64,000 bases of DNA from Macrostomum lignano (taxonomy: Eukaryota), in contig NIVC01003311.1 of NCBI GenBank assembly GCA_002269645.1, positions 40,535 through 104,534 of the forward strand. The letters run 5' to 3'. The notes beneath the pieces were generated by a model. The model had not been told where the DNA came from. It saw only the letters and a program-made list of their open reading frames with translations, and searched no databases. A program made the translations under genes and the position numbers. Of this stretch, positions 11,563 through 64,000 are shown piece after piece. Within the stretch, counting starts at the first letter, position 1; every line of letters begins with the position of its first letter.

Positions 11563-13959
11563 ATGGCCCTGCCGCCAATGAATCACTATCGACAGGGCAT
11601 GGGCCTCGGCATGAGCGGCGGAGGCGCCGGTGTCGGTATGGGCGGCGTCGGCAGCATCGGCGGTGGCATGGGCGGCACCCTCGGCCGTAAGCGAGTCCAA
11701 GTCAGCTACGTGATTCGCGATGAAATTGAAAAGTACAATCGATTCGGCGTGAACTCGTTGCAGTTCGACCCCGTACAGAACCGCCTGTTCACAGCCGGTC
11801 GGGATAGCATAATTCGGATCTATAATACCGCCAATCCCGATGAGCCTTACCTGCAGTCTATGGAGCATCACACAGACTGGGTTAATGACATTGTACTCTG
11901 TTGCAGTAGAAAAAATCTCATCAGCTGTTCCTCCGATACTACAGTGAAAGTTTGGAATAGTTCCAGAGGCTTCTGCATGTCAACATTGCGCACGCACAAA
12001 GACTACGTGCGAGCGCTTGCTTATGCTAAGCACAAAGAGTTAGTAGCTTCAGCCGGACTGGATAAAGCAATCTACATTTGGGATGTGAATGTTTTAACAG
12101 CATTAACTGCCAGTAATAACACTGTTACTACTAGTAGTCTAGCTGGTAATAAAGACAGTATTTACAGTCTGGCAATGAACCATAGCGCCACAATGATTGT
12201 GTCAGGTAGTACAGAGAATGTCTTGCGAATCTGGGATCCCAGATCCTGTCAGAAGCAGTGCAAACTTCGCGGTCACACTGACAATGTTCGCGCGATTGTA
12301 ATTAGCAATGACGGCTCTAGGATATTGAGCGGCTCCTCTGACGGCACTATTAAGCTGTGGTCTGTGGGGGAGCAGCGCTGTATATGGACCTTTTATGGCC
12401 ATACTGCAGGCGTCTGGACTTTGCAGGCCAACGAAGCCTTCAATACGTTGTACTCTTCGGGCAAGGATGCTCAAGTCTTGGCTTGGGATCTCGTCGATAA
12501 TCAGAAGCCCTGCCGGCTAATCTGTCAGGAGGACTGTCCGGTGCTGAAGGTGCTGCTAGTTGAAGAGGCTCAACAGCCGCATTTGTGGATATCAACAACT
12601 AATACCAATGTGAAGCGCTGGCCATTGCCTTCATTACCGTTCCAGCATAGCCAGCACGTTTCTAACCGTCAGAATCAACATCCGGCTATGACGTCATCGA
12701 CTAATAACGCTTCCGGCAACGCTGTTGGTCAAACAACTGCCGCATTCTCAGATCTCACCAATTCTTCAGCCTCTGGCTCGGCATCTGCGTCCGCCTCTGC
12801 ATCCGCCGCCGCCTCTCCCGATGGCGACAAAACGCCGCCTTCACTTCCGCCTCCTCCTATGCCGCCGCCGCCTCCGCCTTTGCAGCAGCCGCAGCAGCCG
12901 CCTCTATCGCCAAAACCGAATTTCTGCATCACTGGCGGCAGCTGTATTCGTCAATATCATATTAGCAACGATAAACGCTTCCTTTTAACTAAAGATTCCA
13001 ACGATTGCGTTGCACTGTACGATGTAGTGCTAGTCCGCAAACTGCAGGACCTTCCTCCGGGTAGTTTTGATCAGCGAGTGGCCGATATGACAGCTAAGAG
13101 AGTCTTTGTACCCAGCTGGTTCTCCGTTGACTTGAAAACTGGCCTACCAATGATTCATCTGGAAGAGCAGGACTGCTTTAGCGCCTGGGTCAGTCAGAGA
13201 GACAGCGGCATAGCTGTTGACAGTCTGCCGAGAGAACCGCAAGTGGCTGGCGGGGTGGCACAACCAGATTCAAAGATCAACTACGGCGGTTTAGTACTAC
13301 AAGCCCTGTTTGAGCACTGGCCACCTACTCGAGTGCGCAAAGAGGACGGCGGATACACCAGGGCTAACATGTACTTCTCTGTGCCTCAGCACACGCCGGT
13401 AGTGCTAAGCGAGTCAACTGGGAGGACTCTGTTCCGACTGCTGGTTAGAGACAGCGGGGGTGAATCGGAGAACTCAATTCTCAACGAGACAGTGCCAGCA
13501 TGGATTACAGACATTCTAATCGAAAAGAATCTGCCAAAGTACATCAAAATCTCTTTCTATTTAAATCCATATCCGTCGTCTAGCGTGAAAAGTTTACGCA
13601 AAGATCGACTTAGTGCCAACGATATGCTGCAGATACGCAAAGTGGCGGAGCACGTTGTAGAGATGTGGCGCACTGAGAGCTTGCCACCAGGGGCGCCGCC
13701 GCCCCCGCTCCCCTATCATCAGCAGCAGCAGCAGCAGCCGCCTCCGCACTCCACGAATCAAGCAGCTTCATCTGATGCGGCTACAGGCGATCAGCAGCAG
13801 AAACCGGCTGAAGAATTAGTCGAAATTCTTATTAACGATACGGTCTTGGATCCTAATATGGACCTGAGAACAGCCAAGCATTTCTATTGGAAGAGTGGCG
13901 GCGATCTAGTTCTGTTCTTTCGGCGTAGGGACGATCGGAAACACGCTAACCGGAAGTGA
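11563..13959 (+). CDS. WDR48: WD repeat-containing protein 48 (USP1-associated factor 1), single exon, 798 aa
   Basis: [55 protein letters not shown] and [12 protein letters not shown]40 blades. Ancillary-domain motifs [21 protein letters not shown] and [16 protein letters not shown]-terminal SUMO-like domain [23 protein letters not shown]. Confidence 0.97.
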
Positions 13960-16151: not shown

Positions 16152-17754
16152 ATGTGGCCGCACCTTCTGTCGCGCGTCGGCCTTCCGTGCGCCGCTCTTG
16201 GCGCCGCTGCCGCAGCTCTGGTGTCGCAGTCGCACAGCTCGCCTTCTCCATCCCAGTCCGATGGTCGATCAGACTGCAGCTCGAATCGTTTCTGTAAGCC
16301 GCTGCTGGCTGGTGCAGCCTCCGCTGCCACTGCCGCACCTTTGACTGCGGCCGCTCCGATCTACATCAACCCGCTGCCCAGTGTTGACGCCTCTCCGGAC
16401 TCTCTGCATAGCAACCTGCGCTGCTGCGGCCCCGCTGTGCCGGTCAGCGGAGCCAAATGGAACCGGAACTGGGATGCTATGGAGGGCCAGGCTGGCAGTC
16501 AGGTGCGGCACATTGTGCTGATTAGGCACGGCAGGTACAGCCTGGCCAGCAGTCACCTGGACGATATGGGTAGGAAGCAGGTGAGTGGGATTTTAGGCTC
16601 CTAGTTGCTGGGCTACCGCCCTCCCAGATCCTCAATTGCTGGGCCAGCCTCCCAGATCTTCAGTTGCTGGGCCAGCCTCCCAGATCCTCAGTAGCTGGGC
16701 CAGCCTCCCAGATCCTCAATTGCTGGGCCAGCCTCCCAGATCCTCAGTTACTGGGCCAGCCTCCCAGATCCTCAGTTGCTGGGCCAGCCTCCCAGATCCT
16801 CAGTTGCTGGGCCAGCCTCCCAGATCCTCAGTTGCTGGGCCAGCCTCCCAGATCCCCAGTTGCAGGGCCAGCCTCCCAGATCCCCAGTTGCTGGGCCAGC
16901 CTCCCAGATCCTCAGTTGCTAGGCCAGCCTCCCAGATCCTCAGTTGCTAGGCCAGCCTCCCAGATCCCCAGTTGCTGAGCCAGCCTCCCAGATCCTCAGT
17001 TGCTGGGCCAGCCTCCCAGATCCCCAGTTGCTGGGCCACCCTCCCAGATCCTCAGTTGCTGGGCCAGCCTCCCAGATCCTCAGTTGCTGGGCCAGCCTCC
17101 CAGATCCTCAGTTGCTAGGCCAGCCTCCCAGATCCCCAGTTGCTGGGCCAGCCTCCCAGATCCCCAGTTGCCGAGGCGAGTTACGCGCACAGAATCCCAG
17201 ACTGACTGAGTGACTTTCTTTTTCAGGCCGACCTTCTCGGCATCCGCCTGGCCGAACTGCACGCCAAACACGGCATCGCTCGGCTGATGTCGTCAAATTC
17301 AACCCGAGCGGTGGAGACGTCGGAGCTGGCTATGCGGCACCTGCCCCACCTGAATGGCAAGCGCGCTGAGGACCCCATGCTGCGCGAGATCGGCTGCCCC
17401 TGCCCGCCAGAGCCGCCCATGAACAACTACAGAGCGGAGTACCGCTACCACGAAGGCTCTGCCTTGGCCGAGGCCGCCTTTCGTCGACATATTCATCGGT
17501 CAAGTCGAAGCGACGAAGCTCAAATAGTTGCCAACGGGGCCAAACTCGAAGTGATCGTTTGTCACGCCAACGTCATTCGATATTTCATCTGTCGAGCGTT
17601 GCAGTTCCCGCCGGAGGCCTGGCTTCGATTCTCATTGGATCATTGTTCGATTACTTGGCTGAGCATTTTCCCTAGCGGGGAGGTCTGCTTGAGATCATTT
17701 AGCGACTCCGGCTACTTGCCGAAGCGATGCGTCACCAGCATGAACGCTGACTGA
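16152..17754 (+). CDS. PGAM5: PGAM5-family mitochondrial Ser/Thr protein phosphatase, paralog A; exons 16152-16580 and 17227-17754 (318 aa)
   Basis: Hydrophobic N-terminus; WNRNWD (WDxNWD-like); LIRHG catalytic motif; TRAVET; LREIG; VCHANVIRYFICRALQFPPEAWLRFSL. Phase-0 intron CAG|GTGAGT...TTCAG|GCC. The start ATG is inferred. Confidence 0.92.
16598..17172. repeat. 28-bp minisatellite filling the PGAM5-A intron (~20 copies)
   Basis: Unit CAGTTGCTGGGCCAGCCTCCCAGATCC(T/C). Confidence 0.97.
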
Positions 17755-18339: not shown

Positions 18340-19920
18340 ATCCCGTCTCAAAATCTCTTATAATGCTTAAAATCCCCCCCCTCAGAATTCTTCCATTTTT
18401 TATATATCCCTATCTCAGAATCTTCCTATAGTTAAAATATCCAGATCTCAGAATCTCCCAATTTTTTAAATATCCCCATCTCAGAATTTCCCCATTGCTG
18501 AAATATTCCAATTTTAGAATAGCCCTATAGTTAAAAATCCAGATCTCAGAATCTCCCCATTCTTAAAAATCCCAGTCTCAGACTCCACATTCTTAAGATA
18601 TCCCCATCTCAAAATCTCCCCATGGTTAAGATATCCCCTTCTCAGAATCTCCCCATTGTTTAAATACATCGTATCTCAGAATCTCCCAATTGTTGAAATA
18701 TCCCCATTTCAGAATCTCCCCATTGTTGAAATATCCCTATATCGGAATCTTCCCATCGTTAAAATATACCCATCTCAGAATCTCCCCATTGCTGAAATAT
18801 TCCAATTTTAGAATAGCCCTATAGTTAAAATATCCAGATCTCAGAATCTCCCCATTCCTAAAAAATCCAGTCTCAGACTCCACATTCTTAAGATATCCCC
18901 ATCTCAAAATCTCCCCATGGTTAAGATATCCCCTTCTCAGAATCTCCCCATTGTTTAAATACATCGTATCTCAGAATCTCCCAATTGTTGAAATATCCCC
19001 ATTTCAGAATCTCCCCATTGTTGAAATATCCCTATATCGGAATCTTCCCATCGTTAAAATATCCCCATCTCAGAATCTCCCCATTGCTGAAATATTCCAA
19101 TTTTAGAATAGCCCTATAGTTAAAATATCCAGATCTCAGAATCTCCCCATTCCTAAAAAATCCAGTCTCAGACTCCACATTCTTAAGATATCCCCATCTC
19201 AAAATCTCCCCATGGTTAAGATATCCCCTTCTCAGAATCTCCCCATTGTTTAAATACATCGTATCTCAGAATCTCCCAATTGTTGAAATATCCCCATTTC
19301 AGAATCTCCCCATTGTTGAAATATCCCTATATCGGAATCTTCCCATCGTTAAAATATTCCCATCTCAGAATTTCCCCATTGCTGAAATATTCCAATTTTA
19401 GAATAGCCCTATAGTTAAAATATCCAGATCTCAGAATCTCCCCATTCTTAAAAATCCCAGTCTCAGACTCCACATTCTTAAGATATCCCCATCTCAAAAT
19501 CTCCCCATGGTTAAGATATCCCCTTCTCAGAATCTCCCCATTGTTTAAATACATCGGATCTCAGAATCTCCCAATTGTTGAAATATCCCCATTTCAGAAT
19601 CTCCCCATTGTTGAAATATCCCTATATCGGAATCTTCCCATCGTTAAAATATTCCCATCTCAGAATTTCCCCATTGCTGAAATATTCCAATTTTAGAATA
19701 GCCCTATACCGGTAGTTAAAATATCCAGATCTCAGAATCTCCCCATTCCTAAAAAATCCAGTCTCAGACTCCACATTCTTAAGATATCCCCATCTCAAAA
19801 TCTCCCCATGGTTAAGATATCCCCTTCTCAGAATCTCCCAATTGTTGAAATATCCCCCATCTCAGAATCTCCCCATTGCTGAAATATCCCGATCTCAGAA
19901 TCTCCCCGTCTTAAAATATC
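18340..19920. repeat. 295-bp higher-order repeat built from ~33-bp subunits, between the PGAM5 paralogs
   Basis: Subunit TCAGAATCTCCCCATTGTTGAAATATCCCCATC; near-identical ORFs at 18737, 19032 and 19327 give a period of 295. Confidence 0.93.
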
Positions 19921-19996
19921 CCCCTCTCTCATACTCTTCCCATTCCTGAACTATCCCAGGTTCCTGGAAACTAACCAGCCAAATAAAATCGAATGC

Positions 19997-21683
19997 ATGT
20001 TGCCGAGTCGCCTGCTCGGCTTCGGCTTATCCTGCGCCGCTGTTGGCGCCGCTAGCGCCGCTCTGTACACCGAGTTGTCCTCGTCAGCGGCTTCGTCAGC
20101 GCCTGACAATAAACTGATGTCTGTCGCGGATCCCTCGGCACCAGCGGTCTACCTGCGCCCGGTGACCAGCGATCAGTTATTGAACAATCTTCGCTGCTGC
20201 GATCCAGTGCTACCCGGAACTAAATGGAACAATAATTGGGATAATAGACATTGGCGAACTACTGATAGTAGTAGTAGTAATAATAATAAAATCCGCAGTA
20301 TTATCCTGGTTAGGCACGGCAGGTTTCATCATTCCGATAGGCTGCTAGACGATCTGGGTAGACGCCAAGCTGAACAGCTGGGTAACCGCTTGGCCCAGCT
20401 GCACAGACGCTACGGTATTAGCAGGATTATTTCGTCTAGCGCGCCTAGAGCCGTGCAAACTGCGGAATTAGCTATGCGCTATCTGCCGAATAATTTGAAG
20501 AGACAAGAGTGCCACCTGTTGACTGAAGTTGGCTGGCCGTGTCCGCCTGAGCCGCCTGGGGCACATTTTGTGCCGGAGTTCTACTATCACGACAGGGCTG
20601 CCAGGGCTGAGGCAGCTTTCCGTCGGCATATTCATCGGGCTGATGACGATGCGGGAGAGTCCACCAATGAGCTGGAGGTCTGTGCTTGTGCTTGGATGAG
20701 GCTTATTTTTGCGTGGGGCTCGAGATGGGATCTTGCGGACAAGTCTTCATGGGATCTTGCGGACAAGTATCGATGGGATCTTGCGGACAAGTCTTGCTGG
20801 GATCTTGCGGACAAGTCTCAATGGGATCTTGCGGACAAGTCTTGATGGGATCTTGCGGACAAGTATCGATGGGATCTTGCGGACAAGTCTTGATGGGACC
20901 TTGCGGACAAGTATCGATGGGATCTTGCGGACAAGTCTTGATGGGATCTTGGGATAAGTATTGATGGGATCTTGCGGACAAGTCTCGATGGGATCTTGCG
21001 GACAAGTCTTGATGGGATCTTGCGGACAAGTCTTGATGGGATCTTGTGGGCACGTATCTATGGGATCTTGCGGACAAGTCCTGATGGGATCTTGCGGACA
21101 AGTCCTGATGGGATCTTGTGGACAAGTATCGATGGGATCTTGCGGACAAGTCTCAATGGGATCTTGCGGACAAGTCTCAATGGGATCTTGCGGACAAGTC
21201 TTGATGGGACCTTGCGGACAAGTATCGATGGGATCTTGCGGACAAGTCTTGATGGGATCTTGGGGATAAGTATTGATGGGATCTTGCGGACAAGTCTCGA
21301 TGGGATCTTGCGGACAAGTCTTGATGGAATCTTGCGGACAAGTCTCAATGGGATCTGGTGGACAAGTCTTTATTTATGGGATCTACAAGACAAGTCTTGA
21401 TGGGATCTTTTGGACACATTGCAACAGACGTAAAAGTGTACTGAAATAATCTTACAGCCAATTTAATCCTCAACTCAAGGTATTCGTCTGTCATCGCAAC
21501 ATCATACGCTACATGGTCTGTCGGGCTCTGCAGTTGCCGCCAGAAGCTTGGCTTCGCTTCTCGGTTGATCACTGCTCAATCACCTGGCTGGACCTGTACC
21601 CGGACGGCCGGGTCTGCCTGCGCTGCTTTGGCGACTCCGGACACGTGCCCGTTAGCCTGCTGTCTAAGGATAATGTGCGCTGA
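19997..21683 (+). CDS. PGAM5: PGAM5-family phosphatase, paralog B; exons 19997-20677 and 21480-21683 (294 aa)
   Basis: WNNNWD, LVRHG, PRAVQT, LTEVG and AEAAFRRHIHRA in exon 1. Exon 2 (absent from the ORF track) reads VFVCHRNIIRYMVCRALQLPPEAWLRFSVDHCSITWL...DSGHVP...VR*. Phase-0 intron GAG|GTCTGT...TCAAG|GTA. Confidence 0.9.
20720..21410. repeat. 24-bp minisatellite filling the PGAM5-B intron
   Basis: Unit GGGATCTTGCGGACAAGTCTTGAT. Confidence 0.97.
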
Positions 21684-23650: not shown

Positions 23651-26600
23651 ATGATAATTCAAATTGCGTTGACGCATTACTGGCACCAAAACAAATTCTA
23701 TTGCCGTATGGACCAAGAGCATCCGGATAATTACGCTCGCGAAGACCCGGCAGCTGAGCTTCATCTTCCATCGCCAAGGCAACAGCCGCCGCCTCCTCTG
23801 CCTCCTCCTCCTCTTGATCCCACAACATTCGCCTTGGCCATGTCTTGTACTGACTTGAGCCGTAGATTAGCTAATCAGTTTTCGGATGAACAGCATCAGC
23901 AGCAGCATCAACAAAGAGCTCAAGCTCAAGCTTACAAAGATGATGACTTAGAATCGTCTAGCGTTGAATTTGACGAACCAAATAGCAATCATAGACAGCA
24001 GAGGCTGCAGGACGACTTTGGCAATAATAGCGGCTCAGATGTTTCCGACATATCGAAGTCTGATCATAGCGCCAACGGCTTGCCTACTGACGAAAGCTTG
24101 AATCGTCTGCTAGAGAAATATAATCTCAGAGCTGGTGATGCCGCCAAACCGCTTACTGTTGGAGTTCACAACGGCAGCTCCAGTTATGATAATTGGCGCA
24201 CGTTCAGTACCACTGGTTACCAGGGACAGCGCGTTGGAAACGGCTCGGTTGTGTCTCCGGAGCATCCTCAACCACCGCCGCCACCGCCTCCGCCACCTGC
24301 TCAGGCTTCTCCAGCTCAGCAGAAACAACAAATTTCTGTGTACGACTATTTATCCGAAGAGACAAAACGCTATTTAAGTCAGGCAAAGTTTAACAGTTTA
24401 GAAGAAGATTTTGTTGAACGATCAACGGCCCAGGCTGCTGCTGTTACTGCGGCTGCTGCTACTTTTGCTTCGTCTGGGACGACAAGAAGTCCAAAGGCTT
24501 CTTATTCGTCACCTTCTGTGCAACAGCAGCAGCAGCAACAACAACAGCAACCGCAGTATTTCATCAACAAGTACATGGAGAACATTAAAACGATGGTATC
24601 GGATGCTTTAACTTTTCGACCAGTGTCTTCACCATCAACAACTGCTGCCGCTGCTGCTGCTGTTGCTTCTGATTCTTCAACTTTCAAACCGTCTAGAGAG
24701 AAATCAAAGGACCCGAAGCAGCGTCAGTTAACGTCTGGTTCAACGCGATCGCATAATAAACCGTCTGCTCCGACCGCTGTGCCAGACTGCACCGCTACAG
24801 TTGACGCGTCGACCTATTCGGTGCGTCAGCTGGACCCAGACGTGCATCGCTGGCTGAATAGTTTAAGTCTCCGAAATCCAGACAAATATGCCGCTCTGTT
24901 TGAGCGTCACGAAATCGATATGGAGAGTCTGTTGTTGCTTAATACCGAGGGTCAATTGCGTAAGCTTGGTGTTACAGCTATTGGTCCGATGACTAAGATG
25001 TTGCATTCAATTCGCGAGTTGAATAGCCAGAGAAATCGGAAACGGCCAGCTTCTGCTCCTCAGCAGGCTATGGCATCTGCTAGGCACCGACCTGAAGGTG
25101 TACCGCCCTTGCACCTGCACATGGCCAAAGTGGTGGAGCGTCAACAGAAGCAGAAACAATTGAAACAAAAGCAACAGCAACAACAGCAGGTCGCGGCGTC
25201 GCCTCAACCCTGGATTCCAGGTGGAGCCAGGGGTAGGCTTGATGCTAAACAGCAGCAAAAGCAGAAACAACAACAACAACAGCATCATCAACCGGCTTCA
25301 TCAAAGCCTGCAATCTCTGCAAAGAAGCCTGCTCAATCATCTCATCCAGTAACTTCGCCAACATCCAATCATCATCCTCTAATAAACAATAAACAGTTGG
25401 TCTCCCAAGCGGAGCGCGACATAGCCAAAGCTGCTCAGAAAGTGAAACAGAAAGAGCTGCGCGAGAAAGAGCAACTACTCGAAGAACGTCGCCAGCACAA
25501 CGAATGGCGTCAGCGTCGCGACGACATTCTCAGGCATCGCCGGCCAAATGCGCCGACACCATCGACCACACCGCGTACGCCTCGCAAAGATGTGCCCGCC
25601 AAGCAGGCAGCGGCTGTGTCAAAATCCAATTCGAACTCGCATTCAAAGGGTTCAACAACTGAGGACACTTCTGTGTCGGCATTTCGCAGTGAGATTAGCG
25701 AAATTGAAAGAAAAATAAGCGAACTGTTGAACGATAACGGTGGCTCGGGTCAAGCAGCTTCGTCTGGTAGTTTATCTGCCGCGGCCGGGGTTAGTCCTAA
25801 TATGCTGTTGGACTCCGTTGAAACGTTTCAAAAGCAACTGCGTCAACTGCAAAATCGTGTAGCCTCGCATCGGCAGCAGCAGCAGCAACAGCCGCAGCAT
25901 CAGTCGCAAAAGCAGCAATCTCCGCCGCAGAAAGAAGAAGTACGCGTGTCGCAAAGTGTCACGGCTAAGGCTGTTGGCTTTGAATTGCATAGCGGCAATG
26001 GGTAAGCATGGCTTTATAAGAAACTTGATGGCTTTTAGAAGTTGTCATTATGCTGCTACCTGGGGTTTTGGGCACTACAATAATGTAGTGGATGTGTCTA
26101 AAGTGGATGCTTCACTTGAAAAGCCAATCAAGCACTAATCTTAGCAATGGGTAGTGACCACGTTAATTTAAGCTTGTGCGCGATTGGAAGATGATGATTT
26201 GAGAAAGTCAGGGCGGCTGTGCACCCTGTGTGAGCGTGTGTATGAGTGCTTGTTTGCTGTGTACAGTATTGGCGCGCTCGCTCTCCAAAAACCCCAACTT
26301 TAACTCAGCGGCCCAGCTGCCAGTTCTTCATCGGATGCCGCCTCGGCAGCTGCTCAAAGACGCACCAGCTGGACTGTGGCAGCCGGATCGTACAAATTCA
26401 ACGAGAAAGAGCTCATCGGCGAGGGCACCCTGACGGCGGTGCATCGCGGCCGTCTAGATGGCGAAGTTGTCGCCGTGAAGCGTTTAAAATTGAAGCTGAG
26501 CTCGGACGAAGACCGGTCCTATCTAGCCGCCGAGGCCAACTTCCTGTGCGGCCTCCGGCACCCCAGACTTAGCCGGGTGCTTGGCTACTGTTTGCGCGGC

Positions 26601-27654
26601 CGATACCCGTTGCTATTCTGCGAATTAGCTCCCAGACGAAGCTTGTCGGATTACCTGCAGGCTGGCAGTAAAGTCGACCATGCCCTGTTTTATTGCTTAG
26701 GCCAAGATCTGGCCGATGCGTTGGAGTTTCTGCACTCGCAACGACCGCCACTACTGCACATGCGGCTGTGCAGCAGGAATGTACTGCTCGATGCCAAACT
26801 TCGTGGCCAGGTAGTTTATGTTTTAATAAAATTTTAAGTGTCACTTTGCGATTTAACTAATTAGATTACAAGGGAGTCTGAATAAGTCATAGTTACTCCC
26901 GCTCTTTACCCAGGTTTTATAATTAGATGACGAGGCAGTTTACGTGTCTAAAGAAGAGATAGTTACTCCCCTGTTTTCCTGATAAAGTCCTAACTATTAC
27001 AAACCGCAGATCTCCGATCTCGGCCTATCCAAGCTCCGTCATCAGGCTGGCCAATTGGCTCGCGAGGCTGGCAACGCCTCGGCGGCCTGGGCGCACCTGG
27101 CCTGGATGGCACCGGAGCTGCTCACAGCGGCCGAGTTCGGCCCGCCAGCCGATCTGTACAGCGCCGGCGTCCTGCTATGGGAGCTGCTGTCGGGCAGGCA
27201 GCCCTACTCCGGCCAGACCGCCTATTCTATCATCACGGCCAAGAAGTCCGGAGCCACCCTCGAGCTGCCGTCTGGTTGTCCGACCATTCTGTCCGACCTC
27301 CTGTCCAGACTGTGGGGATCTCCGGACAGTCGGCCGAATGCTAGCGATTTGAAATCGGCGCTTCGTTCGGCCTGTTTGCCCGGCCGGGCCTGGCCGGATT
27401 TGGTCCGACGGGCCGGCGTCACCGAGGCGGCACTGAGGGACCCCGGCGCCGTCCGACGCTTCCTGGCTAGCGCATGTCGACGGCCGTGTCTTGTCGATTT
27501 GTCGACTCCCGACGATGCGATTTCAGCATCGGCCTCTGGCAGCTTCTGGCTGGTGTCGGAGCCGCGACTGCCGGCTGAGCCTGCTGAGGCTGACGGCGGA
27601 TTTTCCGCGGAATTTCTGGCTGCAGTTGCTAGAGCAGCTCGTGGCGACGAGTAG
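23651..27654 (+). CDS. Low-complexity SAM-domain protein with C-terminal TKL-like (pseudo)kinase domain; exons 23651-26001, 26309-26810, 27010-27654 (about 1165 aa; alternative start 23708)
   Basis: SAM domain DVHRWLNSLSL...KYAALFERHEIDMESLLLL...QLRKLGVTAIGPMTKMLHSIREL at about 24838-25023. The phase-2 junction AATGG|GTAAG...CTCAG|C joins three track ORFs in frame. Kinase motifs: IGEGTLTAVHRG, VAVK, HMRLCSRNVLL, ISDLGLS, WMAPE and ADLYSAGVLLWELLSGRQPY. Confidence 0.8.
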
Positions 27655-27819: not shown

Positions 27820-28360
27820 GAACTTTAAAAGTTGGTTTCTGATGACCTTGAAACGTCACTTCCTTTGACCTTGAAAGTTAGTGTCTGGTTACCTTGAAAC
27901 GTCATTTCCTATGGCCTTGAAAGTTTGTGTCTAATGACCTTGAAACTTCATTTCCTATGACCTTAAAAGTCTCATGACCTTGGAGCGTTATTCAATCGAT
28001 GACCTTGAAACGTTCGTGTCTGATGAACTTGAAATGTTAGTGTCTGAAGACCTTAAAAATGTTCGTGTCTGATGACGTTGAAACGTTATTGCCTGATGAC
28101 CTTGAAATTGAAATGTTAGTGTCTGATGACCTTAAAACTTCCATTTCCTATGACCTTGAAAGTTAGTGTCGGATGACCTTAAAACGTTATTTTCTTATGA
28201 CCTTGAAACATTATTGTCTAATGACCTTGAAATGTTATTGTCTGATGACCTCAAAAATTTAGTGTCTGACGACCTTAAAATGTTTGTGTCTGATGACCTT
28301 GAAACGTTATTGCCTGATGACCTTGAAATTTTAGCGTCTGATGACCTTGAATCCTTAGTG
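27820..28360. repeat. Degenerate ~24-bp minisatellite
   Basis: Core GATGACCTTGAAA(C/T)GTTA(G/T)TGTCT. Confidence 0.85.
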
Positions 28361-29299
28361 TCTTCACCTCAACGTTAACGTCTCAACGATTTATTCCATA
28401 CCCTTCCATACCTTGATCTAAGCCTACTGTCTATCAAAACTAAGGTAATTAAGCTTCTGACGTAGCAAAAGCCTTCACTAAACATTTTCGTTTGTTTCAA
28501 AAGCACAATATATTTGCGTCCAATAAAAAAACAAAGCAGGAAAATATTTGTATATTTGTTTATTTATTCATTTATTTATCATTTAAATACTCGTAATGTT
28601 TTCTACTATTTTTGTCCCCGGTACAAACACACAATTGGCGAGTTCCAAGCACCTTTTCTGCCTGAGATTTTAGCCTTTTCCCTGCAACCGCTAATTTGTG
28701 TACATTGCCAACCGCTAATTTTATCAATTGATCATTCCAATGCGTGTTTTTCATATTTTTTATTTTAAACTTTTACCGCTCGGATAGGCTGTTAAATAAA
28801 TAAAAACTTATAAATCGAATTTGCTAATTAAATTACTTTAAGTAGACGCAGTGTTTTCTAATCAAATAATTGCTTTTCATTCTCAATTAATTTGTCTAAT
28901 CCGTCCCAATGTTTTATTATTATTTTTTTCTATCATCTAAATAATTATACAACCATTTGTACATTAACATCATTACTACTGATACCTGTGTAAGTAGTAT
29001 ATTTATAGTGTTTTTTCTGTGTCACAAATTTTCAAAAAGTGGTTACAAAAAACCTACTCTGCAGAGCAGTACTTTGTGTAAAGCAATTTAGTCTATGCAT
29101 TATTTACGCATATACCAAAAAATACTTATAAGTAGTATTTATTTATTGCTTAAATTTCGTTGAGCTTTTTTCGTAGTAGCTGGCATTAAGGCGTGAATAA
29201 AATTGGCCCAATTTTTTTAAAAGCAGCAGCATCACTTGCCGCAATAATTACTTGTTGTTTCTTCTATTTTTCTCGTTTAGCAGCTTAGCCATTAATATG

Positions 29300-30230: not shown

Positions 30231-30298
30231 ATGAACGGCACGGGGGATGCGCCACCCGATCCTTCGGCGGCTGCTTGGGCCGCTTGGGCCTCCGCGCA

Positions 30299-30331
<33 letters not shown>

Positions 30332-33300
30332 GCAACAACAACAGGTACCGCCACCTCAACAACAACCCTCTGAGTCTCAAGCAAGCGGTACTCCGCTAGA
30401 CCAACAGCAGCAACAGCAGCCTCCTTTAACTAACGGCATGCCTCAATTGCCATCAATGATGTCCTACATGCTGCACGAGTTGTCCGCCGCTTATCATTCT
30501 CTGCGTAGCATGCAAAATCCTCAACAGCAGTTGGCTTCAATGTGGCTAAATCCTGCGCATCCGCCTACGCATCCGCCTACGCATCCGCCTACGCATCCGC
30601 CTACGCATCCGCCTACACATCCGACAACGCACCCGCCTACGAATCCGCCTACGAATCCGCCTATGCATCCGCCTACACATCCGCCTACATATCCGCCTAC
30701 ACATCCGCCTACACATCCGCCTACGCATCCGCCTACGCATCCGCCTACACATCCGCCTACACATCCGCCTGCGTATTCGAGCACATCTCCCTATCCCTAT
30801 GCTAGCTACGCGCCCCCCGCTGGGCCGAACTTGAGCTTCCCCGTGCCGCCTCCGCCGCCCCCGCCGCCGCCACCTCCGCCGTCGGCATCTTCAACCTGCC
30901 ACCAAGACTCCGGCCCCGTGCCTCTGATGGGCTTGAAGCCTCGCGCTAGTTTAAAATGGAATGCCGCTGAATTCGAATCGAAGTACGGCTGTGGCTCCTC
31001 CGCATCCTCTGCTGCCGAGTCTTCTTCGGCTGCAAAACTTTTTTCGACTCAATCGTCTTATCTGCAATCGTCTGCTTCTGCTTCTTGCTCTTCATCAAAA
31101 TCAACTGCTAGCGGCCGGCCTGGCAGCTTCCGAAATCCCTACTTTGCCGATCCCAACGTGAAAAAAGAATTAGCAGAGGAGCGGGAGCGAACTAATCCGG
31201 AGCTGTCTGTGCCGCAACCGGAGGCCAAGGTGATTTATGGTCCAATCGATTACCGTTACGCCAAGATCAACGCTAATTTACTGGTTGCCAAGCCGTCGCT
31301 AATAGCTTTAGAAGAGGAATTCGTGGAAGAAATTATGAAGCGTCGCGAACGCGCTCTGGTCGGTCAGCCTCGCTGGCGTCCGCTGGTTCGAAACGCCGCT
31401 GCAGAAGACGCCGCAGTCGCTGCAGCAGCTGCCGCTTCCGCCGACGCTGTCGACGCGGTCGAAGCCGACTCGGAGTCGTCATTATCTGACGGCGAAATTG
31501 TCGAATCCGAGGCTGTCCGTCAGCACCGAGCTCGGTTCAAGCTGGTCCGCCAGCGTCACCGGGCCAAGAAGCAGTACGACGATTTGAAAGCCAAAGGCAG
31601 AGTCGACCGACTGTCCGGTCTGAATGTCGATGGCATGTCCGAAGCGCAGCGACGCGAAATGGAGACGGCGGTGCGCAAGATTACAATTCGTACTCTGTGC
31701 CAACAACAAGAGGTTGAGCACAAGATGCGACATCCGCAGAAGCTCAATCCGCACCTGTGGTATAATGAGCCTGGCGAATTGAATGATGGGCCCAGGTGCT
31801 ACTGCAAACCGGAGTATCAGGTTGGTCTCTTCTGTGGGTTACAACTACTGCAGGATCTGACAACTTTTTGCTTTCTGCAGTTCTTGAATTTATCACTAAA
31901 ATCGTTTTCGTTTCTAGTGAGTGGGTCGTTTAAACTCATTCACCAATTGTTCCCCAACTCACCAATTATTCACCGATTCACTAATGATTCAACAACTCAC
32001 CAATTATTCATCGGTTTACCAACTCACCAATGATTCACCGATTCTCCAACTCATTAATGATTCACCGATTCACTAATGATTCACCAACTCACCAATGATT
32101 CACCGATTCTTCAACTCACCAATTATTCACCGATTTACCAGCTCACCAATGATTCACTAATTTACCAACTCACCAATGATTCACCGATTCTTCAACTCAC
32201 CAATTATTCACCGATTTACCAGCTCACCAATGATTCACCGATTTACCAACTCATTAATGATTCACCGATTCTCCAACTCACCAATTATTCACCGATTCAC
32301 CAACTCATTAATGATTCACCGATTCACCAACTCACCAATGATTCACCGGTTCACTAACTCACTAATGATTCAACAACTCACTAATGATTCACCAATTTAC
32401 CAACTCACCAATGATTCACCAATTCACCAGTGAGTTTATGCCATGCAACTCTTCTAATCTCTGAGTGTACTTACAAGGAAAACTCAACAAGACCCCATTC
32501 CACCCGCAGGTCGGCCCATCGCACTGCAAATACGAAGGCGAGTCGGCCATTCCCAAATGCGACCCGCATAGCAACAATCCCAACAAGCTTCATCACTATC
32601 GAATCTGCGTCCTGCCAAACACAAATTATTCCGCTAAGCAGCCTTCGGTTATAATGTACAAAAATCTCAAATACGAATTCGAAGGTTTCGGCTTATTGAG
32701 CCACTATAAACTTGACGATTTGCCACCGTGCAAATTCCATCGCTACAACATATTCTACAAGGTGCACTTGGTGCCGGAACCTCTGCCGCCAAATTTCACC
32801 GTCCGTTCGCTAGATTTGTTAAGCGACTTTGTCATGTACGAATTGTTGGAACTGCTTGACGAGACTCTCTATCCTTCGGGTGCTGATGAGGCCACGTCTT
32901 GTCGGTGTTTTCACCTTTATCCGAGATTCTCTCGTCGCGGACACGACGGCGCTTTGGAGCTGTTGCCAGCCTGGGCGATTCTGCAGCACCTGCTGGACAA
33001 TAGCGGCTTATTAATTGAGCCAGACTGTTTGGATAGCGTTCTTCGAATGTCAAAAGAGGAGTGGCGCAATTTTATTGATCAGTGGCGCGGCCAGTTAATC
33101 ACCTATCCAGGTAAGAAGCCGTCAACTATTCGAGTGGATCAAGTTGACAGATGCTCAGCAGCCGCTTCTGCAGCTTCATCAGACGGTCGGGACAAGCCAA
33201 CCTATCCGTATGTGATTCATATCACCCAGGTGCCGCTTAAATTCGGTTGGCAAGCCGAGAACACTTACCGGCGCACGCTGAAGTCCTACTTTCGCGAACA

Positions 33301-34663
33301 GTACATGATCGTGTTTAATCCACGGGTTGGCGCTGAGCAAAGAGAGAAGCTGCAGCATTTGCGCGAAAAAATGCGCGTTGTTGAGGAGGCGCCAGATAAG
33401 CGGCGCGAGGTGACGGTAGAGATGAGCGCTGAAGGCTTCCGGCGCACAGGTCTCAGACCGGATGTGACTCAGTTCGCCTTGTTGCTGCCGCACTTTCTGT
33501 CTTTCTGTCGACTTCACCGAAGCATCTCAGCCTTAGAGAGTCGCATTGGCTACGTCTTCAAGGACAAATCGCTGTTCCATCAGGCCATGACTCATCCGTC
33601 ATCGATTCGTTCCACTCTTGGCTTGAACTCTGATCACGTGCTCAACAGCATGCTGAATTGCGGTCCCCGGCTGTTAGAATACGGCGAAGTTCGAGAAATC
33701 CGCCAGGCAACAAGAAAGCACGGCTTAGCTTACACAGTCAACGTCATGTCCATGCTGCCAAGTATTTTAGAGAAGAAATCGCCAATATTTGGCAACGATC
33801 GACTCGAGTATCTTGGCGACGCGGTTGTTGAACTCATCGTTACTACTCACCTGTTCTATATCTTGCCGGAGGTTAGCGAAGGTCATCTTGACGCATTTCG
33901 TCAGTCATTGGTGATGAATGCCCACCTGGCCTTGCTGGCTAGGCGGCTGGGGCTGCACTGCTACCTGCAGTACGCGCACGGCATGGATTTCTATCTGGAT
34001 TCCACTTTTATGCACGCTTATTCCGATGCATTCGAAGCCTTCATGGCCGCTGTGTATTTGGATGGCGGCTTAGCTCTGGCTAATCGCATCTTTGCTGACG
34101 TCATGTGGGGCAGCGATCCGTCCTGTCTCCGGGTCTGGTGCACACCGCCGCCGCATCCCATCCAGCTGGAGTATCCTGACGGAGATCGGCACCTGTTGCC
34201 ACAGCATCCTAAGCTCAAGGTGCGTATAATAGTACTTCGATGCAGAAGTTTCCTCTGTCTCTCTCCCTTCAACTCTTGCAGTGTCTGAGATCTGTTATGG
34301 CTTGCTCAGGGTGGCTCAAGACACGTCCGCATATGCACACTCTGGCTTTTCAATCTGATTTGACAACTGTAGTTTCAAGGCTTGATTTTGTTGTGTAGGG
34401 AATTGTCTTAGGGTGAAATTTTTGTAGTTTAAGTTCAGAAAAGTGCGCCTGAGTAAAAACAACTGCAATTAAGAAGCTCCCTGTCTCATCTATGCAGGAA
34501 GGTTCGACCTTCAAATGAACCCTAGATTTGTAAATGGTTCTGTTGTTTCATTCATTGATCAAAAGCCTATGTGATATGTATTGTATATCTATTTGTCTGT
34601 CTTTCTTTCTGTCTGTCTGTCTGTCTTTTTGTATTTTTGTCTGTCTGCCTGTCTGTCTGTCTT

Positions 34664-34780: not shown

Positions 34781-37700
34781 CTGTGTCTGTATGTCTCTCT
34801 TTATGTCTATCTTTGTGCCAGTGCATAGTTGTGCCATTCCGAGCAAGCCATGCTAGATACCAGAACTTATTAAACGTTTCGACAGCTCCCCTACCATCTT
34901 ATTAGACTAGCATGAAACTAATATTTCATAAAATGAGGATACAATTATGTAGCCTCACCAGCTTATCAGTTGACTACTACTCAGCCTTGCGCCTAAAAAA
35001 TGCTGCACATATTTGGCTTGCAGCCTGAGCACAGCGGCAATAAAATTTGGGTCCGCTTGGCTGCTGGAGTAAACTGACACGAGCGGTGCTTAGGCTGATC
35101 GACTGGTTTTCCTGCACCTTATAAACCTACCGCCCTGACAGTTAAAACATTTATTGAATTTACTATGTGCCGAGTAGACTACTTTGAGCTAGTATTATAA
35201 AATGAATGTTTTTTACTTTTATGTTATCGGAGCGTAATTATCTAATTCTCGGTTTTTTTAATTGTGGTAACTATTTTATGTTATCACTGGCTGATTGTGT
35301 CTGTATGAGTCTTATTGGTGTCTGTAATTGTCTGTATGAGTCTAGTTGGTGTCTGTAATTGTCTGTTTGTGTCTGTACGAGTCTCATTGGTGTCTGCAAT
35401 TGTCTGTATGAGTCTTATTGGTGTCTGTAATTGTCTGTATGAGTCTAGTTGGTGTCTGTAATTGTCTGTTTGTGTCTGTACGAGTCTCATTGGTGTCTGT
35501 AATCGTCTGTATGAGTCTTATTGGTGTCTGTAATTGTCTGTATGAGTCTAGTTGGTGTCTGTAATTGTCTGTTTGTGTCTGTACGAGTCTCATTGGTGTC
35601 TGCAATTGTCTGTATGAGTCTTATTGGTGTCTGTAATTGTCTGTATGAGTCTAGTTGGTGTCTGTAATTGTCTGTTTGTGTCTGTACGAGTCTCATTGGT
35701 GTCTGTAATCGTCTGTATGAGTCTTATTGGTGTCTGTAATTGTCTGTATGAGTCTAGTTGGTGTCTGTAATTGTCTGTTTGTGTCTGTACGAGTCTCATT
35801 GGTGTCTGTAATCGTCTGTATGAGTCTTATTGGTGTCTGTAATTGTCTGTATGAGTCTAGTTGGTGTCTGTAATTGTCTGTTTGTGTCTGTACGAGTCTC
35901 ATTGGTGTCTGTAATCGTCTGTATGAGCCTAGTTGTTGTCTGTAATTGTCTGTATGAGTCTAGTTGGTGTCTGTAATTGTCTGTTTGTGTCTGTACGAGT
36001 CTCATTGGTGTCTGTAATCGTCTGTATGAGTCTTATTGGTGTCTGTAATTGTCTGTATGAGTCTAGTTGGTGTCTGTAATTGTCTGTTTGTGTCTGTACG
36101 AGTCTCATTGGTGTCTGTAATCGTCTGTATGAGCCTAGTTGTTGTCTGTAATTGTCTGTATGAGTCTAGTTGGTGTCTGTAATTGTCTGTTTGTGTCTGT
36201 ACGAGTCTCATTGGTGTCTGTAATCGTCTGTATGAGTCTTATTGGTGTCTGTAATTGTCTGTATGAGTCTAGTTGGTGTCTGTAATTGTCTGTTTGTGTC
36301 TGTACGAGTCTCATTGGTGTCTGTAATTGTCTGTATGAGTCTTATTGGTGTCTGTAATTGTCTGTATGAGTCTAGTTGGTGTCTGTAATTGTCTGTTTGT
36401 GTCTGTACGAGTCTCATTGGTGTCTGTAATCGTCTGTATGAGTCTTATTGGTGTCTGTAATTGTCTGTATGAGTCTAGTTGGTGTCTGTAATTGTCTGTT
36501 TGTGTCTGTACGAGTCTCATTGGTGTCTGCAATTGTCTGTATGAGTCTTATTGGTGTCTGTAATTGTCTGTATGAGTCTAGTTGGTGTCTGTAATTGTCT
36601 GTTTGTGTCTGTACGAGTCTCATTGGTGTCTGTAATCGTCTGTATGAGCCTAGTTGTTGTCTGTAATTGTCTGTTTGTGTCTGTATGAGCCAGTCTATAT
36701 GGTTTCTGTAATTTTGCTTGTCTGTTTGTGTCTGTACGAATCTTGTTCGTTTTTGTAATTCTGTCTGCTTGTTTGTCTGTGTAAGTATAGTTTGTGTCTG
36801 AAATTCTGTATGTGTCTAGTTGTTGTCTGTATTTTGTCTGTAAGCCTATGTAAGTCCAGCTGTAAATTTGTAATTCTTTCTGTTTGTCTGTTTATAGGTG
36901 TAGCTATACTTATACTACTTTTCTGTAATTCTGTAATTTGTATTAAATCCCTTGCAATTTCTTTTTCAACCTTCAAATTCTTGTAATCTTCTGCCCCTTC
37001 TCTGCCAAAAACTGTCTAATCAACTTTGTGTTGAGCAGCAGCTTCAAAGCTCTCTTGCTACTTCATGCCAGGGTCTTCGCTAGTTAGCCAGTGCAGTTAT
37101 CAACTGATCTGTTTGAGAGACTGAATTTTATCGTTGCATCGCTTGTATGGGGATCTGCCTGGCTGCTAATGAGCTGCACTGATGTGAGTAAATTCAATCA
37201 AGCCTTCAAGACTCGCGCTCGTTAGAGACACTTTGACTAAATGAGTCCGGCTTCCTCCTGTAACTGACTGCCTGCTTTTTAGTAGATTTGCTGAGAATCT
37301 CTTCTGGAATAGTTTCCATGAAGTTCGTGGTGCACGCTGGATTTTCATTTCAGCTTTTAATTTGCCAGGGTTAACTGCTAATGTGTCGTCCTCAGTTGCT
37401 GGGCCAGCCTCCCAGATCCTCAGTTGCTGGGCCAGCCTCCCAGTTCCTCAGTTGCTGGGCCTGCCTCCCAGATCCCCAGTTGCTGGGCCAGCCCCCCAGA
37501 TCCTCAGTTGCTGGGCCAGCCTCCCAGATCCTCAGTTGCTGGGCCAGCCTCCCAGATCTTCAGTTGCTGGGCCAGCCTCCCAGATCCTCAGTTGCTGGGC
37601 CAGCCTCTCAGATCCTCAGTTGCTGGGCCAGCCTCCTAAGATCCCCAGTTGCAGGTCCAACATCACTACTGTTACCAGACGTTGAGAAAAAAGTCTCAAC

Positions 37701-63551: not shown

Positions 63552-64000
63552 GTGCTCTAAATAACGAGACTCCTGTTTTCTCACTCGACCGGAATTTGTT
63601 GTTTAATCTGCCTTAACTAATCTCTGCGTTTCAGTTTTTCAGTTTCACTGTCAATTTTAGGTTTTTTTCTAAGCGCAAGTGTAATTGAATTTTTATTCAT
63701 ATTAGTCAGGCATATTGCGTACAGCATTATAGCGTATTAGTAAAGGTAAAGGTAAATAGACTGCTTGTAACTAGTTTTTCCTTCATGTGGATTGGCTTTA
63801 ACGAACTTTTGTATTTCAAGTAATGCTGAATTCGCTGGACTGAGGACAATATAGTTACACGATGATATGCTATTCCTTCACTTTCAATAGATCATACTAT
63901 TAGTATGGGACGTGCTTTTTTATTTCAATGTATGCTTTTTTCATCATTTAAATGCTAAAAATACTTAATAGGTCATTGCACTGTGTGGTATGTGTGTGTT

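What the first reader, a model, noticed from the sequence alone, without database searches (positions are those of the whole stretch)
23651..27654. SAM domain fused to a C-terminal TKL-type pseudokinase
Three track ORFs join through phase-compatible introns into one ~1165-aa protein: a disordered Q/P/S-rich region, SAM, coiled coil, then kinase. The kinase keeps VAVK, DLG (for DFG) and APE. The catalytic loop is HMRLCSRN instead of HRDLxxxN, so the catalytic Asp is lost, and the Gly loop is degenerate (GEGTLT). That predicts a pseudokinase. SAM upstream of a kinase is known in fungal Ste11, whereas ZAK and Eph have the kinase first. I do not recognise this architecture in animals. It could be a polymerising signalling scaffold.
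Basis: partly seen in the sequence, partly recalled or inferred. Interest (0 to 1): 0.7.

Follow-up and report, generated by a model that had tools for sequence, protein, structure and literature searches.

The report
Flatworm SAM-domain dead kinase gene
This is a real, transcribed three-exon gene of the flatworm Macrostomum lignano that encodes a SAM domain followed by a probably inactive kinase; it is a degenerate member of an old, unstudied kinase family found in many marine invertebrates.

Summary
Three exons (23651/23708-26001, 26309-26810, 27010-27654, + strand) join in frame through GT-AG introns. They encode a 1165-aa protein (1146 aa from Met20) with a SAM domain (aa 396-457) and a TKL-type kinase domain (aa 815-1069). 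The product is identical to GenBank PAA52046.1 (Macrostomum lignano Mlig015150.g6), a model built from RNA-seq. Two further ~99% identical copies are annotated.

The catalytic loop is HMRLCSRN in all three copies. The catalytic Asp is Arg and the loop Lys is Cys, while Lys841, Glu859, Asn941, Asp954 (DLG) and APE are kept. A pseudokinase that can still bind ATP is therefore the best reading.

The claim that the architecture is absent from animals is wrong. An exhaustive search finds collinear relatives (SAM, helices, kinase) in molluscs, a brachiopod, echinoderms, a hemichordate and amphioxus. Malacostracan crustaceans and an ichthyosporean give kinase and tail matches, but Pfam detects no SAM in them. 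All are unnamed. Most keep HLD, so the loss is lineage-specific, and GEGxFS is the family's normal Gly loop.

The family also has a PBD/GBD-like segment after the kinase, which the flatworm keeps. It has a conserved C-terminal tail, which the flatworm has lost. Function is untested.

The parts
23651..26001 (+). Exon 1: N-terminal disordered Q/P/S-rich region, SAM domain and helical region. The ORF opens at ATG 23651, but the probable start codon is Met20 at 23708.
   Evidence: in-frame stop at 23633; annotated transcripts start at aa 12 or aa 17
24836..25021 (+). SAM domain (aa 396-457)
   Evidence: Pfam SAM_1 E 2.6e-12. 39% identical to the amphioxus relative's SAM, E 1e-14. Translation checked.
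25388..25534 (+). Long charged helix (aa 580-628) ending in RRDDILR. MAFFT places it on the family's conserved '...RDKMAAxH' helix.
   Evidence: AF2 helix with pLDDT 91-95. 49% charged residues, weak heptad pattern. Family alignment; the BLAST match for this segment is not significant.
25667..25732 (+). Heptad-regular helix (aa 673-694), a candidate coiled coil
   Evidence: AF2 helix with pLDDT 76-89. All a/d positions are V/F/I/I/I/L.
25796..25903 (+). Second helix (aa 716-751). It contains LLDSVETFQKQLRQLQ, which aligns with the family's 'LQKQL' helix.
26002..26308 (+). Intron 1 (GT...AG, splits codon 784 after its second base)
   Evidence: The junction peptide HSGNG|GPAAS is present in three GenBank products.
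26309..26810 (+). Exon 2: N-lobe and catalytic loop of the kinase domain
26757..26780 (+). Catalytic loop HMRLCSRN. R936 (26763-26765) replaces the catalytic Asp, C938 replaces the loop Lys, and N941 is kept.
   Evidence: Identical in all three annotated copies.
26811..27009 (+). Intron 2 (GT...AG, phase 0)
27010..27654 (+). Exon 3: DLG, APE, C-lobe, post-kinase segment, short tail and TAG stop (27652-27654)
27376..27474 (+). PBD/GBD-like segment after the kinase (aa 1074-1106, LPGRAWPDLVRRAGVTEAALRDPGAVRRFLASA)
   Evidence: A family profile built without the flatworm sequence matches it at E 1.8e-4. The family profile's four best PDB hits are WASP GBD chains and an Entamoeba PAK PBD. Pfam PBD positions 24-53 match below threshold in 5 of 14 members. 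Pfam finds no PBD in the flatworm segment scanned alone.

Best explanation
The locus is an intact, transcribed Macrostomum lignano gene (GenBank Mlig015150.g6; two more ~99% identical copies exist). It encodes a fast-evolving member of an old, uncharacterised holozoan family.

The family's layout is: disordered N-terminus, SAM domain, charged and heptad helices, a non-RD TKL kinase with an HLD catalytic loop, a PBD/GBD-like segment, a variable linker that is often proline-rich, and a conserved C-terminal tail.

In the flatworm the catalytic Asp has become Arg and the catalytic-loop Lys has become Cys. The juxta-kinase helix and the C-terminal tail are also gone. The ATP-contacting residues (K841, E859, N941, D954) and the kinase fold remain.

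The most likely working model is a nucleotide-binding but catalytically dead pseudokinase. It would act as a scaffold or allosteric switch and self-associate through its SAM domain and heptad helices. The PBD-like segment would serve as an intramolecular or partner-binding regulatory latch.

Shown: gene structure, domains, the substitutions, family membership and conservation of the copies. Inferred: loss of catalysis, ATP binding, oligomerisation and the regulatory role.
For: Gene model and its identity to an RNA-seq-derived annotation.

Three copies all carry HMRLCSRN. All indels between copies are multiples of three, and there are 11 synonymous versus 9 non-synonymous differences, a rough dN/dS of about 0.3.

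Domains. The kinase fold is modelled at pLDDT >90 and matches TK/TKL structures, with CTR1 at TM 0.91.

Family: in an exhaustive search of 1.84 billion representative proteins, every single-domain top hit (35-40% identity, alignment running past the kinase) belongs to one group. These hits come from Haliotis, Patella, Mytilus, Potamilus, Lingula, Antedon, Patiria, Ptychodera, Branchiostoma, crustaceans and Chromosphaera.

Pfam finds SAM in 10 of the 19 aligned proteins. The kinase (36% identity, E 3e-57) and SAM (39%, E 1e-14) matches to amphioxus are collinear.

Catalytic loop: HLD, HMD or HYD in 12 of 14 aligned members, against HMR in the flatworm. The flatworm is the longest branch, at 33% mean identity against 43-57% for the others.

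The SAM profile is closest to Caskin, BICC1, DGK-delta, ANKS3, tankyrase and Shank SAMs.

PBD-like segment.

Functional precedents for SAM plus TKL: PfTKL3 needs its SAM for activity and the SAM self-interacts (PMC2933843). PfpTKL is a SAM-bearing TKL pseudokinase that binds ATP, lacks catalysis and scaffolds partners (PMC6544628).
Against: - No activity, ATP-binding or oligomerisation data exist.
- Some kinases without the canonical Asp keep weak activity (for example HER3 and JAK2 JH2, from general knowledge).
- The copy-to-copy comparison has only 20 substitutions, so purifying selection is only weakly shown.
- Flatworm proteins evolve fast in general, so the long branch does not by itself prove relaxed constraint.
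- The SAM was modelled at low confidence because the alignment did not cover it.
- The PBD similarity is below Pfam's threshold, lacks the CRIB core, and Pfam does not detect it in the flatworm sequence alone.
- The three gene IDs do not occur in the held supplementary text of the germline/neoblast re-analysis paper, so no expression pattern is known.
Confidence: 0.7

Rival explanations
1. It is still an active kinase that uses a non-canonical catalytic arrangement, so 'pseudokinase' is a misnomer.
For: All nucleotide- and metal-binding residues (K841, E859, N941, D954) and APE are kept, and the fold is intact. The family is non-RD (HLD), so its catalytic loop is already unusual.
Against: The residue at the catalytic-base position is Arg, which is positively charged. 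The neighbouring Lys that contacts the gamma-phosphate is Cys. No nearby Asp or Glu could obviously substitute. Twelve of 14 relatives keep the Asp.
Confidence: 0.15
2. The gene is drifting towards loss. It would be a redundant leftover in a recently duplicated genome with no selected function.
For: M. lignano carries large recent duplications (PMC5730564). The protein has lost the catalytic Asp, the juxta-kinase helix and the conserved C-terminal tail, and it is the most divergent member.
Against: The 3.5-kb ORF is intact in three copies, every indel is in frame, and splice sites are canonical. The gene is in the transcript-based annotation. SAM, kinase-core and PBD-like residues remain recognisable at 36-39% identity to deuterostome relatives.
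Confidence: 0.08
3. It is two neighbouring genes (a SAM protein and a kinase) wrongly joined.
For: There is a 307-bp gap between the first two ORFs, and M. lignano has polycistronic transcription units that are cut by trans-splicing.
Against: The same joined product is annotated from transcripts at three loci. Splice phases fit. The same SAM-then-kinase order within one protein is conserved in distant phyla.
Confidence: 0.03
4. It belongs to an already named SAM-associated kinase family: KSR, MLK, ZAK or Ste11/MEKK.
For: The kinase and SAM profiles both hit ZAK/MAP3K20. MLKs have a CRIB after the kinase and KSR has an N-terminal CC-SAM plus a pseudokinase (general knowledge).
Against: Pfam finds no C1, SH3 or Ras-association domain. 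The domain order is the reverse of ZAK. RAF/KSR chains are not among the 60 best sequence matches. The kinase is TKL, not STE. The closest relatives form their own unnamed group.
Confidence: 0.04

Closest known systems
Unnamed invertebrate SAM-TKL kinases (e.g. Haliotis rubra XP_046561668.1, Branchiostoma floridae XP_035681333.1, Patiria miniata XP_038055741.1, Ptychodera flava XP_070553545.1, Lingula anatina XP_013405886.2)
   Same: The order SAM, helices, TKL kinase and PBD-like segment is the same. Identity is 33-36% over the kinase region in the family alignment (35-40% in the search hits) and 29-43% over the SAM. The Gly loop is GEGxF(S/T) and the WMAPE motif is shared.
   Different: Relatives have HLD and DFG, a juxta-kinase helix (HRKQIRxLExELxRL) and a conserved C-terminal tail ending in a Trp. 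The flatworm has HMR and DLG and lacks that helix and the tail. Lingula (VLE, GFG) and Lymnaea (HLN) have lost catalytic residues independently.
Plasmodium pTKL and TKL3 (SAM-bearing TKL proteins)
   Same: Both have a SAM upstream of a TKL domain. pTKL is a pseudokinase that binds ATP, lacks catalysis and scaffolds partners through its SAM. TKL3 activity depends on its self-interacting SAM (PMC6544628, PMC2933843).
   Different: They are apicomplexan proteins with MORN motifs and RVxF sites. No orthology was shown here and they were not among the top hits.
ZAK / MAP3K20 and the MLK family (TKL)
   Same: The kinase profile hits ZAK, DLK, MLK1/4 and TAK1, and ZAK's SAM matches at E 1.8e-5. MLKs carry a Cdc42/Rac-binding CRIB after the kinase (general knowledge), which is comparable in position to the PBD-like segment.
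   Different: ZAK has the kinase first and the SAM last. MLKs have an SH3 and a leucine zipper after the kinase. All are HRD kinases. No SH3 was found.
ACK1 / TNK2
   Same: An animal kinase with an N-terminal SAM before the kinase and a CRIB-type GTPase-binding element after it (general knowledge, not tested here).
   Different: ACK is a tyrosine kinase (HRDLAARN) with SH3, Mig6-homology and UBA regions. ACK structures were not among the 60 best matches.
PAK and WASP GTPase-binding domains (PBD/GBD)
   Same: The family's post-kinase segment FPPEWRxLFxxAGIPxEAxxD matches the part of the PBD that follows the CRIB motif. The top PDB hits are 2K42, 1EJ5 and 1CEE (WASP) and 4MIT (Entamoeba PAK). 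Pfam PBD positions 24-53 also match.
   Different: The CRIB core (ISxPxxFxHxxHVG) is absent. Scores are below Pfam's cut-off (18.8 against 21.3 bits). GTPase binding is untested.

Membership tests
Unnamed holozoan SAM-TKL kinase family | The kinase domain's closest relatives are family members, and the alignment extends past the kinase | tested here: met
   all single-stretch top hits (35-40% identity, query positions about 12-305) belong to the group; 36% identity over 297 aa to amphioxus, E 3e-57.
Unnamed holozoan SAM-TKL kinase family | SAM domain upstream of the kinase with the family signature (CDPxVxxWL...NEIDM...MGITAxG) | tested here: met
   (39% identity, E 1e-14, collinear with the kinase match)
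Unnamed holozoan SAM-TKL kinase family | HLD (non-RD) catalytic loop HLDLKSxN | tested here: not met
   the flatworm has HMRLCSRN. This is read as secondary loss, as in Lingula.
Unnamed holozoan SAM-TKL kinase family | PBD-like segment directly after the kinase | tested here: met
   a profile built without the flatworm sequence gives E 1.8e-4 over 39 columns. Part of that alignment overlaps the last kinase helix.
Unnamed holozoan SAM-TKL kinase family | Conserved C-terminal tail (LLxQKxxLRPV ... SIAEILKKAxxERRxAM ... WS) | tested here: not met
   hhalign probability 0.06%. The protein ends at RGDE with no terminal Trp.
Unnamed holozoan SAM-TKL kinase family | Conserved helices between the SAM and the kinase | tested here: inconclusive
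   MAFFT aligns two of the three helices. BLAST finds no significant match there.
Pseudokinase | Loss of at least one of the beta3 Lys, the catalytic-loop Asp or the DFG Asp | tested here: met
   the catalytic-loop Asp is Arg936. K841 and D954 are kept.
Pseudokinase | No phosphotransfer activity | not testable with these tools
   Needs an in vitro kinase assay.
TKL group | Kinase domain closest to TKL kinases | tested here: met
   CTR1, TNNI3K, ZAK, DLK, MLK1/4 and TAK1 rank highest, apart from a tandem EGFR construct whose score is summed over two domains.
KSR | C1 domain and a RAF-like kinase domain | tested here: not met
   no C1. RAF/KSR chains are not among the 60 best sequence matches.
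ZAK / MLK | Kinase first, then leucine zipper, then SAM (ZAK); or SH3, kinase, leucine zipper, CRIB (MLK) | tested here: not met
   the SAM lies 360 aa upstream of the kinase and there is no SH3.
Ste11 / MEKK | STE-group kinase domain | tested here: not met
   the top matches are TKL and TK kinases, with no STE kinase among the 60 best.
WASP-family nucleation-promoting factors | WH2 (V), central (C) and acidic-Trp (A) elements at the C-terminus | tested here: not met
   Flatworm: no tail. Family tail: no Pfam WH2, no WASP hit among PDB sequences, and hhalign against WASP/N-WASP/WAVE1 VCA gives probability 0.6%.

The most novel reading that the evidence does not exclude
The family as a whole may be a kinase fused to a WASP-like actin-regulatory module. 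After the kinase come a GBD-like segment, a proline-rich stretch in many members, and then an extreme C-terminus with three elements in WASP's V-C-A order and at similar spacing. These are an LLxQKxxLRPV motif (WH2-like), an amphipathic SIAEILKKAxxERRxAM helix (like the WASP C helix, which binds the GBD) and a Ser/Asp/Glu-rich end with an invariant Trp. If so, these proteins would couple phosphorylation, GTPase input and Arp2/3 or actin control in one chain. The flatworm protein would then be a version stripped of both outputs. Only the GBD-like part has statistical support. The V-C-A reading rests on motif resemblance and failed every profile test I could run.
Probability: 0.15. Interest if true: 0.85.

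Novelty: new variant of a known kind. Interest (0 to 1): 0.5.

Why it matters
The gene itself is already in GenBank as a hypothetical protein, so the locus is not new. What is new is its context. It belongs to a conserved SAM-TKL kinase family that reaches from an ichthyosporean to amphioxus. No vertebrate, insect or nematode protein appeared among the 18 relatives I identified, although absence from those groups was not tested. I could find no paper on the family.

That makes it a gap in kinome classification. The family has an unusual non-RD catalytic loop and a PAK/WASP-like regulatory segment. At least three lineages (Macrostomum, Lingula, Lymnaea) have independently lost catalytic residues, so it offers a natural series for studying how kinases turn into pseudokinases. 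M. lignano has RNAi and transgenesis (PMC5730564), so the dead version can be studied in vivo.

Tried and rejected
1. A word-index homology search with the full protein was swamped by poly-Q words and generic kinases. It returned only the self-hit and distant kinases.
2. The same tool with the family kinase profile added only four fragments, from Lottia, Tegillarca, Capitella and Saccoglossus. With the tail profile it returned a single 74-aa Mytilus fragment. I therefore could not map the taxonomic range or find other flatworm orthologues.
3. V-C-A hypothesis for the family tail: no Pfam WH2 hit, no WASP-family hit in PDB sequences, and hhalign against a PDB-verified WASP/N-WASP/WAVE1 VCA alignment gave probability 0.6%. 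It is kept only as a speculative reading.
4. My eyeballed match of the flatworm C-terminal helix (FSAEFLAAVARAAR) to the family's C-like helix is not supported.
5. AlphaFold2 of the flatworm tail alone gave low confidence (pLDDT 56, pTM 0.33), and Foldseek found nothing.
6. (profile against the flatworm tail) was circular because the profile contained the query. I repeated it without the query.
7. Literature searches by gene ID, by relatives' accessions and by keywords found nothing on the family. The three Mlig IDs are absent from the held supplementary text of the germline/neoblast re-analysis paper. The main texts of the Schistosoma and Fasciola kinome papers mention no SAM-bearing TKL.
8. 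KSR, MLK, ZAK, Ste11 and ACK membership were considered and rejected on domain content, domain order and kinase affinity.
Full report
**1. What is there**

The window is eukaryotic and rich in minisatellites.
- Exon 1 ends at 26001 and is followed by GTAAGC.
- Exon 2 runs 26309-26810, preceded by CTCAG and followed by GTAGTT.
- Exon 3 starts at 27010 after CCGCAG and ends with TAG at 27652-27654.

The joined CDS is 3498 nt and reads through in one frame, giving 1165 aa from the ATG at 23651. Pfam finds SAM_1 at aa 396-457 (E 2.6e-12) and a Tyr/Ser-Thr-type kinase domain at aa 817-1069 (E 2.7e-41).

**2. Identity and transcript support**

The protein is 99% identical to PAA61702.1, a hypothetical protein of the flatworm Macrostomum lignano. 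The 90% cluster holds three GenBank products: Mlig024048.g2, Mlig005584.g2 and Mlig015150.g6. The last is identical to the window's spliced product over all its 1154 residues.

These GenBank models were not predicted ab initio. They come from a genome-guided assembly of RNA-seq (StringTie/TACO) merged with a de novo transcriptome (PMC5730564).

All three annotated products are 5'-partial and start inside the ORF. With an in-frame stop at 23633, the start is either 23651 or, more likely, Met20 at 23708.

Comparing the window with the Mlig024048 locus gives 11 synonymous and 9 non-synonymous substitutions and only in-frame indels. This fits a maintained ORF, but the numbers are small.

**3. The kinase domain**

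Alignment to MLK4 and EGFR and to relatives shows the following:

| Element | Flatworm | Status |
|---|---|---|
| Gly loop | GEGTLT | family norm is GEGxFS |
| beta3 Lys | K841 | kept |
| alphaC Glu | E859 | kept |
| Catalytic loop | H934-M-R936-L-C938-S-R-N941 | Asp replaced by Arg, loop Lys replaced by Cys |
| DFG | D954-L-G | Asp kept |
| APE | present | kept |

Only the catalytic Asp and the adjacent loop Lys are lost, and the motif is the same in all three copies.

AlphaFold2 models the domain at pLDDT >90. Foldseek matches TK/TKL kinases, with CTR1 at TM 0.91.

By sequence, the best solved relatives are MLK4, MLK1, CTR1, SYK and TNNI3K for the flatworm protein. For the family profile they are CTR1, TNNI3K, ZAK, DLK and TAK1. 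The 'TKL-type' label is supported.

A pseudokinase that can probably still bind nucleotide is the best prediction. Activity itself cannot be tested here.

**4. The family**

An exhaustive phmmer search of 1.84 billion representative proteins with the kinase and tail gave 318,830 hits. Multi-kinase proteins top the list only because their scores are summed over domains. Every high-ranking single-domain hit aligned at 35-40% identity and past the end of the kinase domain.

These hits come from:
- gastropods and bivalves (Haliotis, Patella, Bulinus, Plakobranchus, Elysia, Lymnaea, Mytilus, Potamilus, Solemya)
- Lingula
- a crinoid and a sea star
- Ptychodera
- amphioxus
- malacostracan crustaceans (Macrobrachium, krill, Hyalella)
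- the ichthyosporean Chromosphaera

A later search added fragments from Lottia, Tegillarca, Capitella and Saccoglossus. All are 'uncharacterized' or carry automatic names such as 'drkD-like' or 'pakF-like'.

Ten of the 19 aligned proteins have a Pfam SAM upstream of the kinase. The others are fragments, crustacean models without the N-terminus, or the ichthyosporean, where Pfam sees no SAM. Against amphioxus, the flatworm protein gives two collinear matches: SAM (39% identity, E 1e-14) and kinase plus post-kinase segment (36%, E 3e-57).

It is a conserved architecture that nobody seems to have described.

**5. What is lineage-specific**

In the family the Gly loop is GEGxFS, and the catalytic loop is HLDLKSxN in 10 of 14 aligned members. 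Ptychodera has HMD and Chromosphaera has HYD. This is a non-RD kinase with the Asp intact.

The flatworm's GEGTLT is close to the family norm, and DLG is also found in Chromosphaera. The flatworm's Asp-to-Arg and Lys-to-Cys changes are derived. Lingula (VLELNTTH and GFG) and Lymnaea (HLN) have lost catalytic residues independently.

The flatworm sequence is the longest branch, at 33% mean identity. The other animals are at 49-57% and the ichthyosporean at 43%.

**6. Other conserved parts**

Between the SAM and the kinase the family has three conserved helices. MAFFT aligns the flatworm to two of them: the charged helix ending RRDDILRH and the LQKQL helix. The juxta-kinase helix is missing.

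AlphaFold2 predicts these as long helices at pLDDT 76-95. One has a perfect heptad pattern, and the longest is 49% charged. 'Coiled coil' is therefore only partly established.

Directly after the kinase the family has FPPEWRxLFxxAGIPxEAxxDxxSARxII. A profile of this segment finds, as its four best matches among 177,635 PDB sequences, three WASP GBD constructs and an Entamoeba PAK PBD (E 0.012-0.14). Pfam's PBD model matches positions 24-53 below threshold in 5 of 14 members.

The flatworm keeps this segment. A profile built without it gives E 1.8e-4, though Pfam alone does not detect it. The CRIB core is absent.

**7. The family's C-terminal tail**

All full-length relatives end with LLxQKxxLRPV, then PHPSQL, then SIAEILKKAxxERRxAM, then a Ser/Asp/Glu-rich stretch with an invariant Trp. 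A proline-rich run often lies upstream.

The order and spacing recall the V-C-A end of WASP-family proteins, and a GBD-like element in the same chain makes that attractive. However, Pfam WH2, a PDB profile search and hhalign against a PDB-verified VCA alignment all failed to support it.

The flatworm protein has no detectable tail. I report the WASP-like reading only as the most novel possibility that is not excluded.

**8. SAM domain**

The family SAM profile is closest to Caskin-1/2, BICC1, DGK-delta, ANKS3/6, tankyrase and Shank SAMs (E 1e-13 to 1e-6). By general knowledge these form head-to-tail polymers.

Experimental precedents for SAM plus TKL exist in Plasmodium. TKL3 needs its self-interacting SAM for activity (PMC2933843). 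pTKL is an ATP-binding, inactive, scaffolding pseudokinase (PMC6544628).

**9. Verdict**

The best model is a transcribed, maintained, catalytically dead and probably self-associating derivative of an undescribed SAM-TKL kinase family (confidence about 0.7).

It is not a member of KSR, MLK, ZAK, Ste11 or ACK. The locus is moderately interesting. The family, and above all its PBD-like segment and C-terminal tail, deserves a proper study.

Noticed in passing
window 49850-63600 (runs towards the end of the window): Tandem array of at least 21 nearly identical (about 100%) copies of a ~664-bp unit. It explains the flat base composition from 50 to 62 kb. Its nature (satellite or tandem gene array) is unknown.
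   Followed up: partly
window, many sites, e.g. 2115-4105, 4515-5684, 18381-19928, 35299-36682, 39692-41207, 41498-43113: Introns and intergenic DNA are packed with minisatellites (periods 4-295 bp, up to 80 or more copies). Several create long spurious ORFs and the extreme GC-skew values.
   Followed up: partly
window 27828-28363: A 24/48-bp tandem repeat lies just downstream of the gene's stop codon. It produces a spurious 70-aa ORF (28166-28378). This flank differs by 6.4% between the two gene copies, against 0.2-0.8% in the exons.
   Followed up: partly
window 11563-13959 (+); 17287-17754 and 19997-20845 (+); 30231-34288 and 43829-44938 (+): All neighbours lie on the same strand. They are a WD40 + DUF3337 protein, a histidine-phosphatase (His_Phos_1) gene just upstream, and a Drosha-like gene (two RNase III domains and a dsRBD) downstream with repeat-filled introns. 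The '.g2' and '.g6' suffixes suggest that the target is one gene within a multi-gene transcription unit.
   Followed up: partly
related proteins P0082 (Lingula anatina XP_013405886.2) and P0159 (Lymnaea stagnalis CAL1535237.1): Independent loss of catalytic residues in the same family. Lingula has VLELNTTH and GFG in place of HLDLKSxN and DFG. Lymnaea has HLNLNS.
   Followed up: partly
related proteins, last ~80 residues (e.g. P0066, P0072, P0081, P0046, P0096, P0108): Conserved C-terminal tail: LLxQKxxLRPV, then PHPSQL, then SIAEILKKAxxERRxAM, then an invariant Trp near the end, often after a poly-proline run. It resembles WASP-type V-C-A in order and spacing, but no profile test supported this.
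   Followed up: yes
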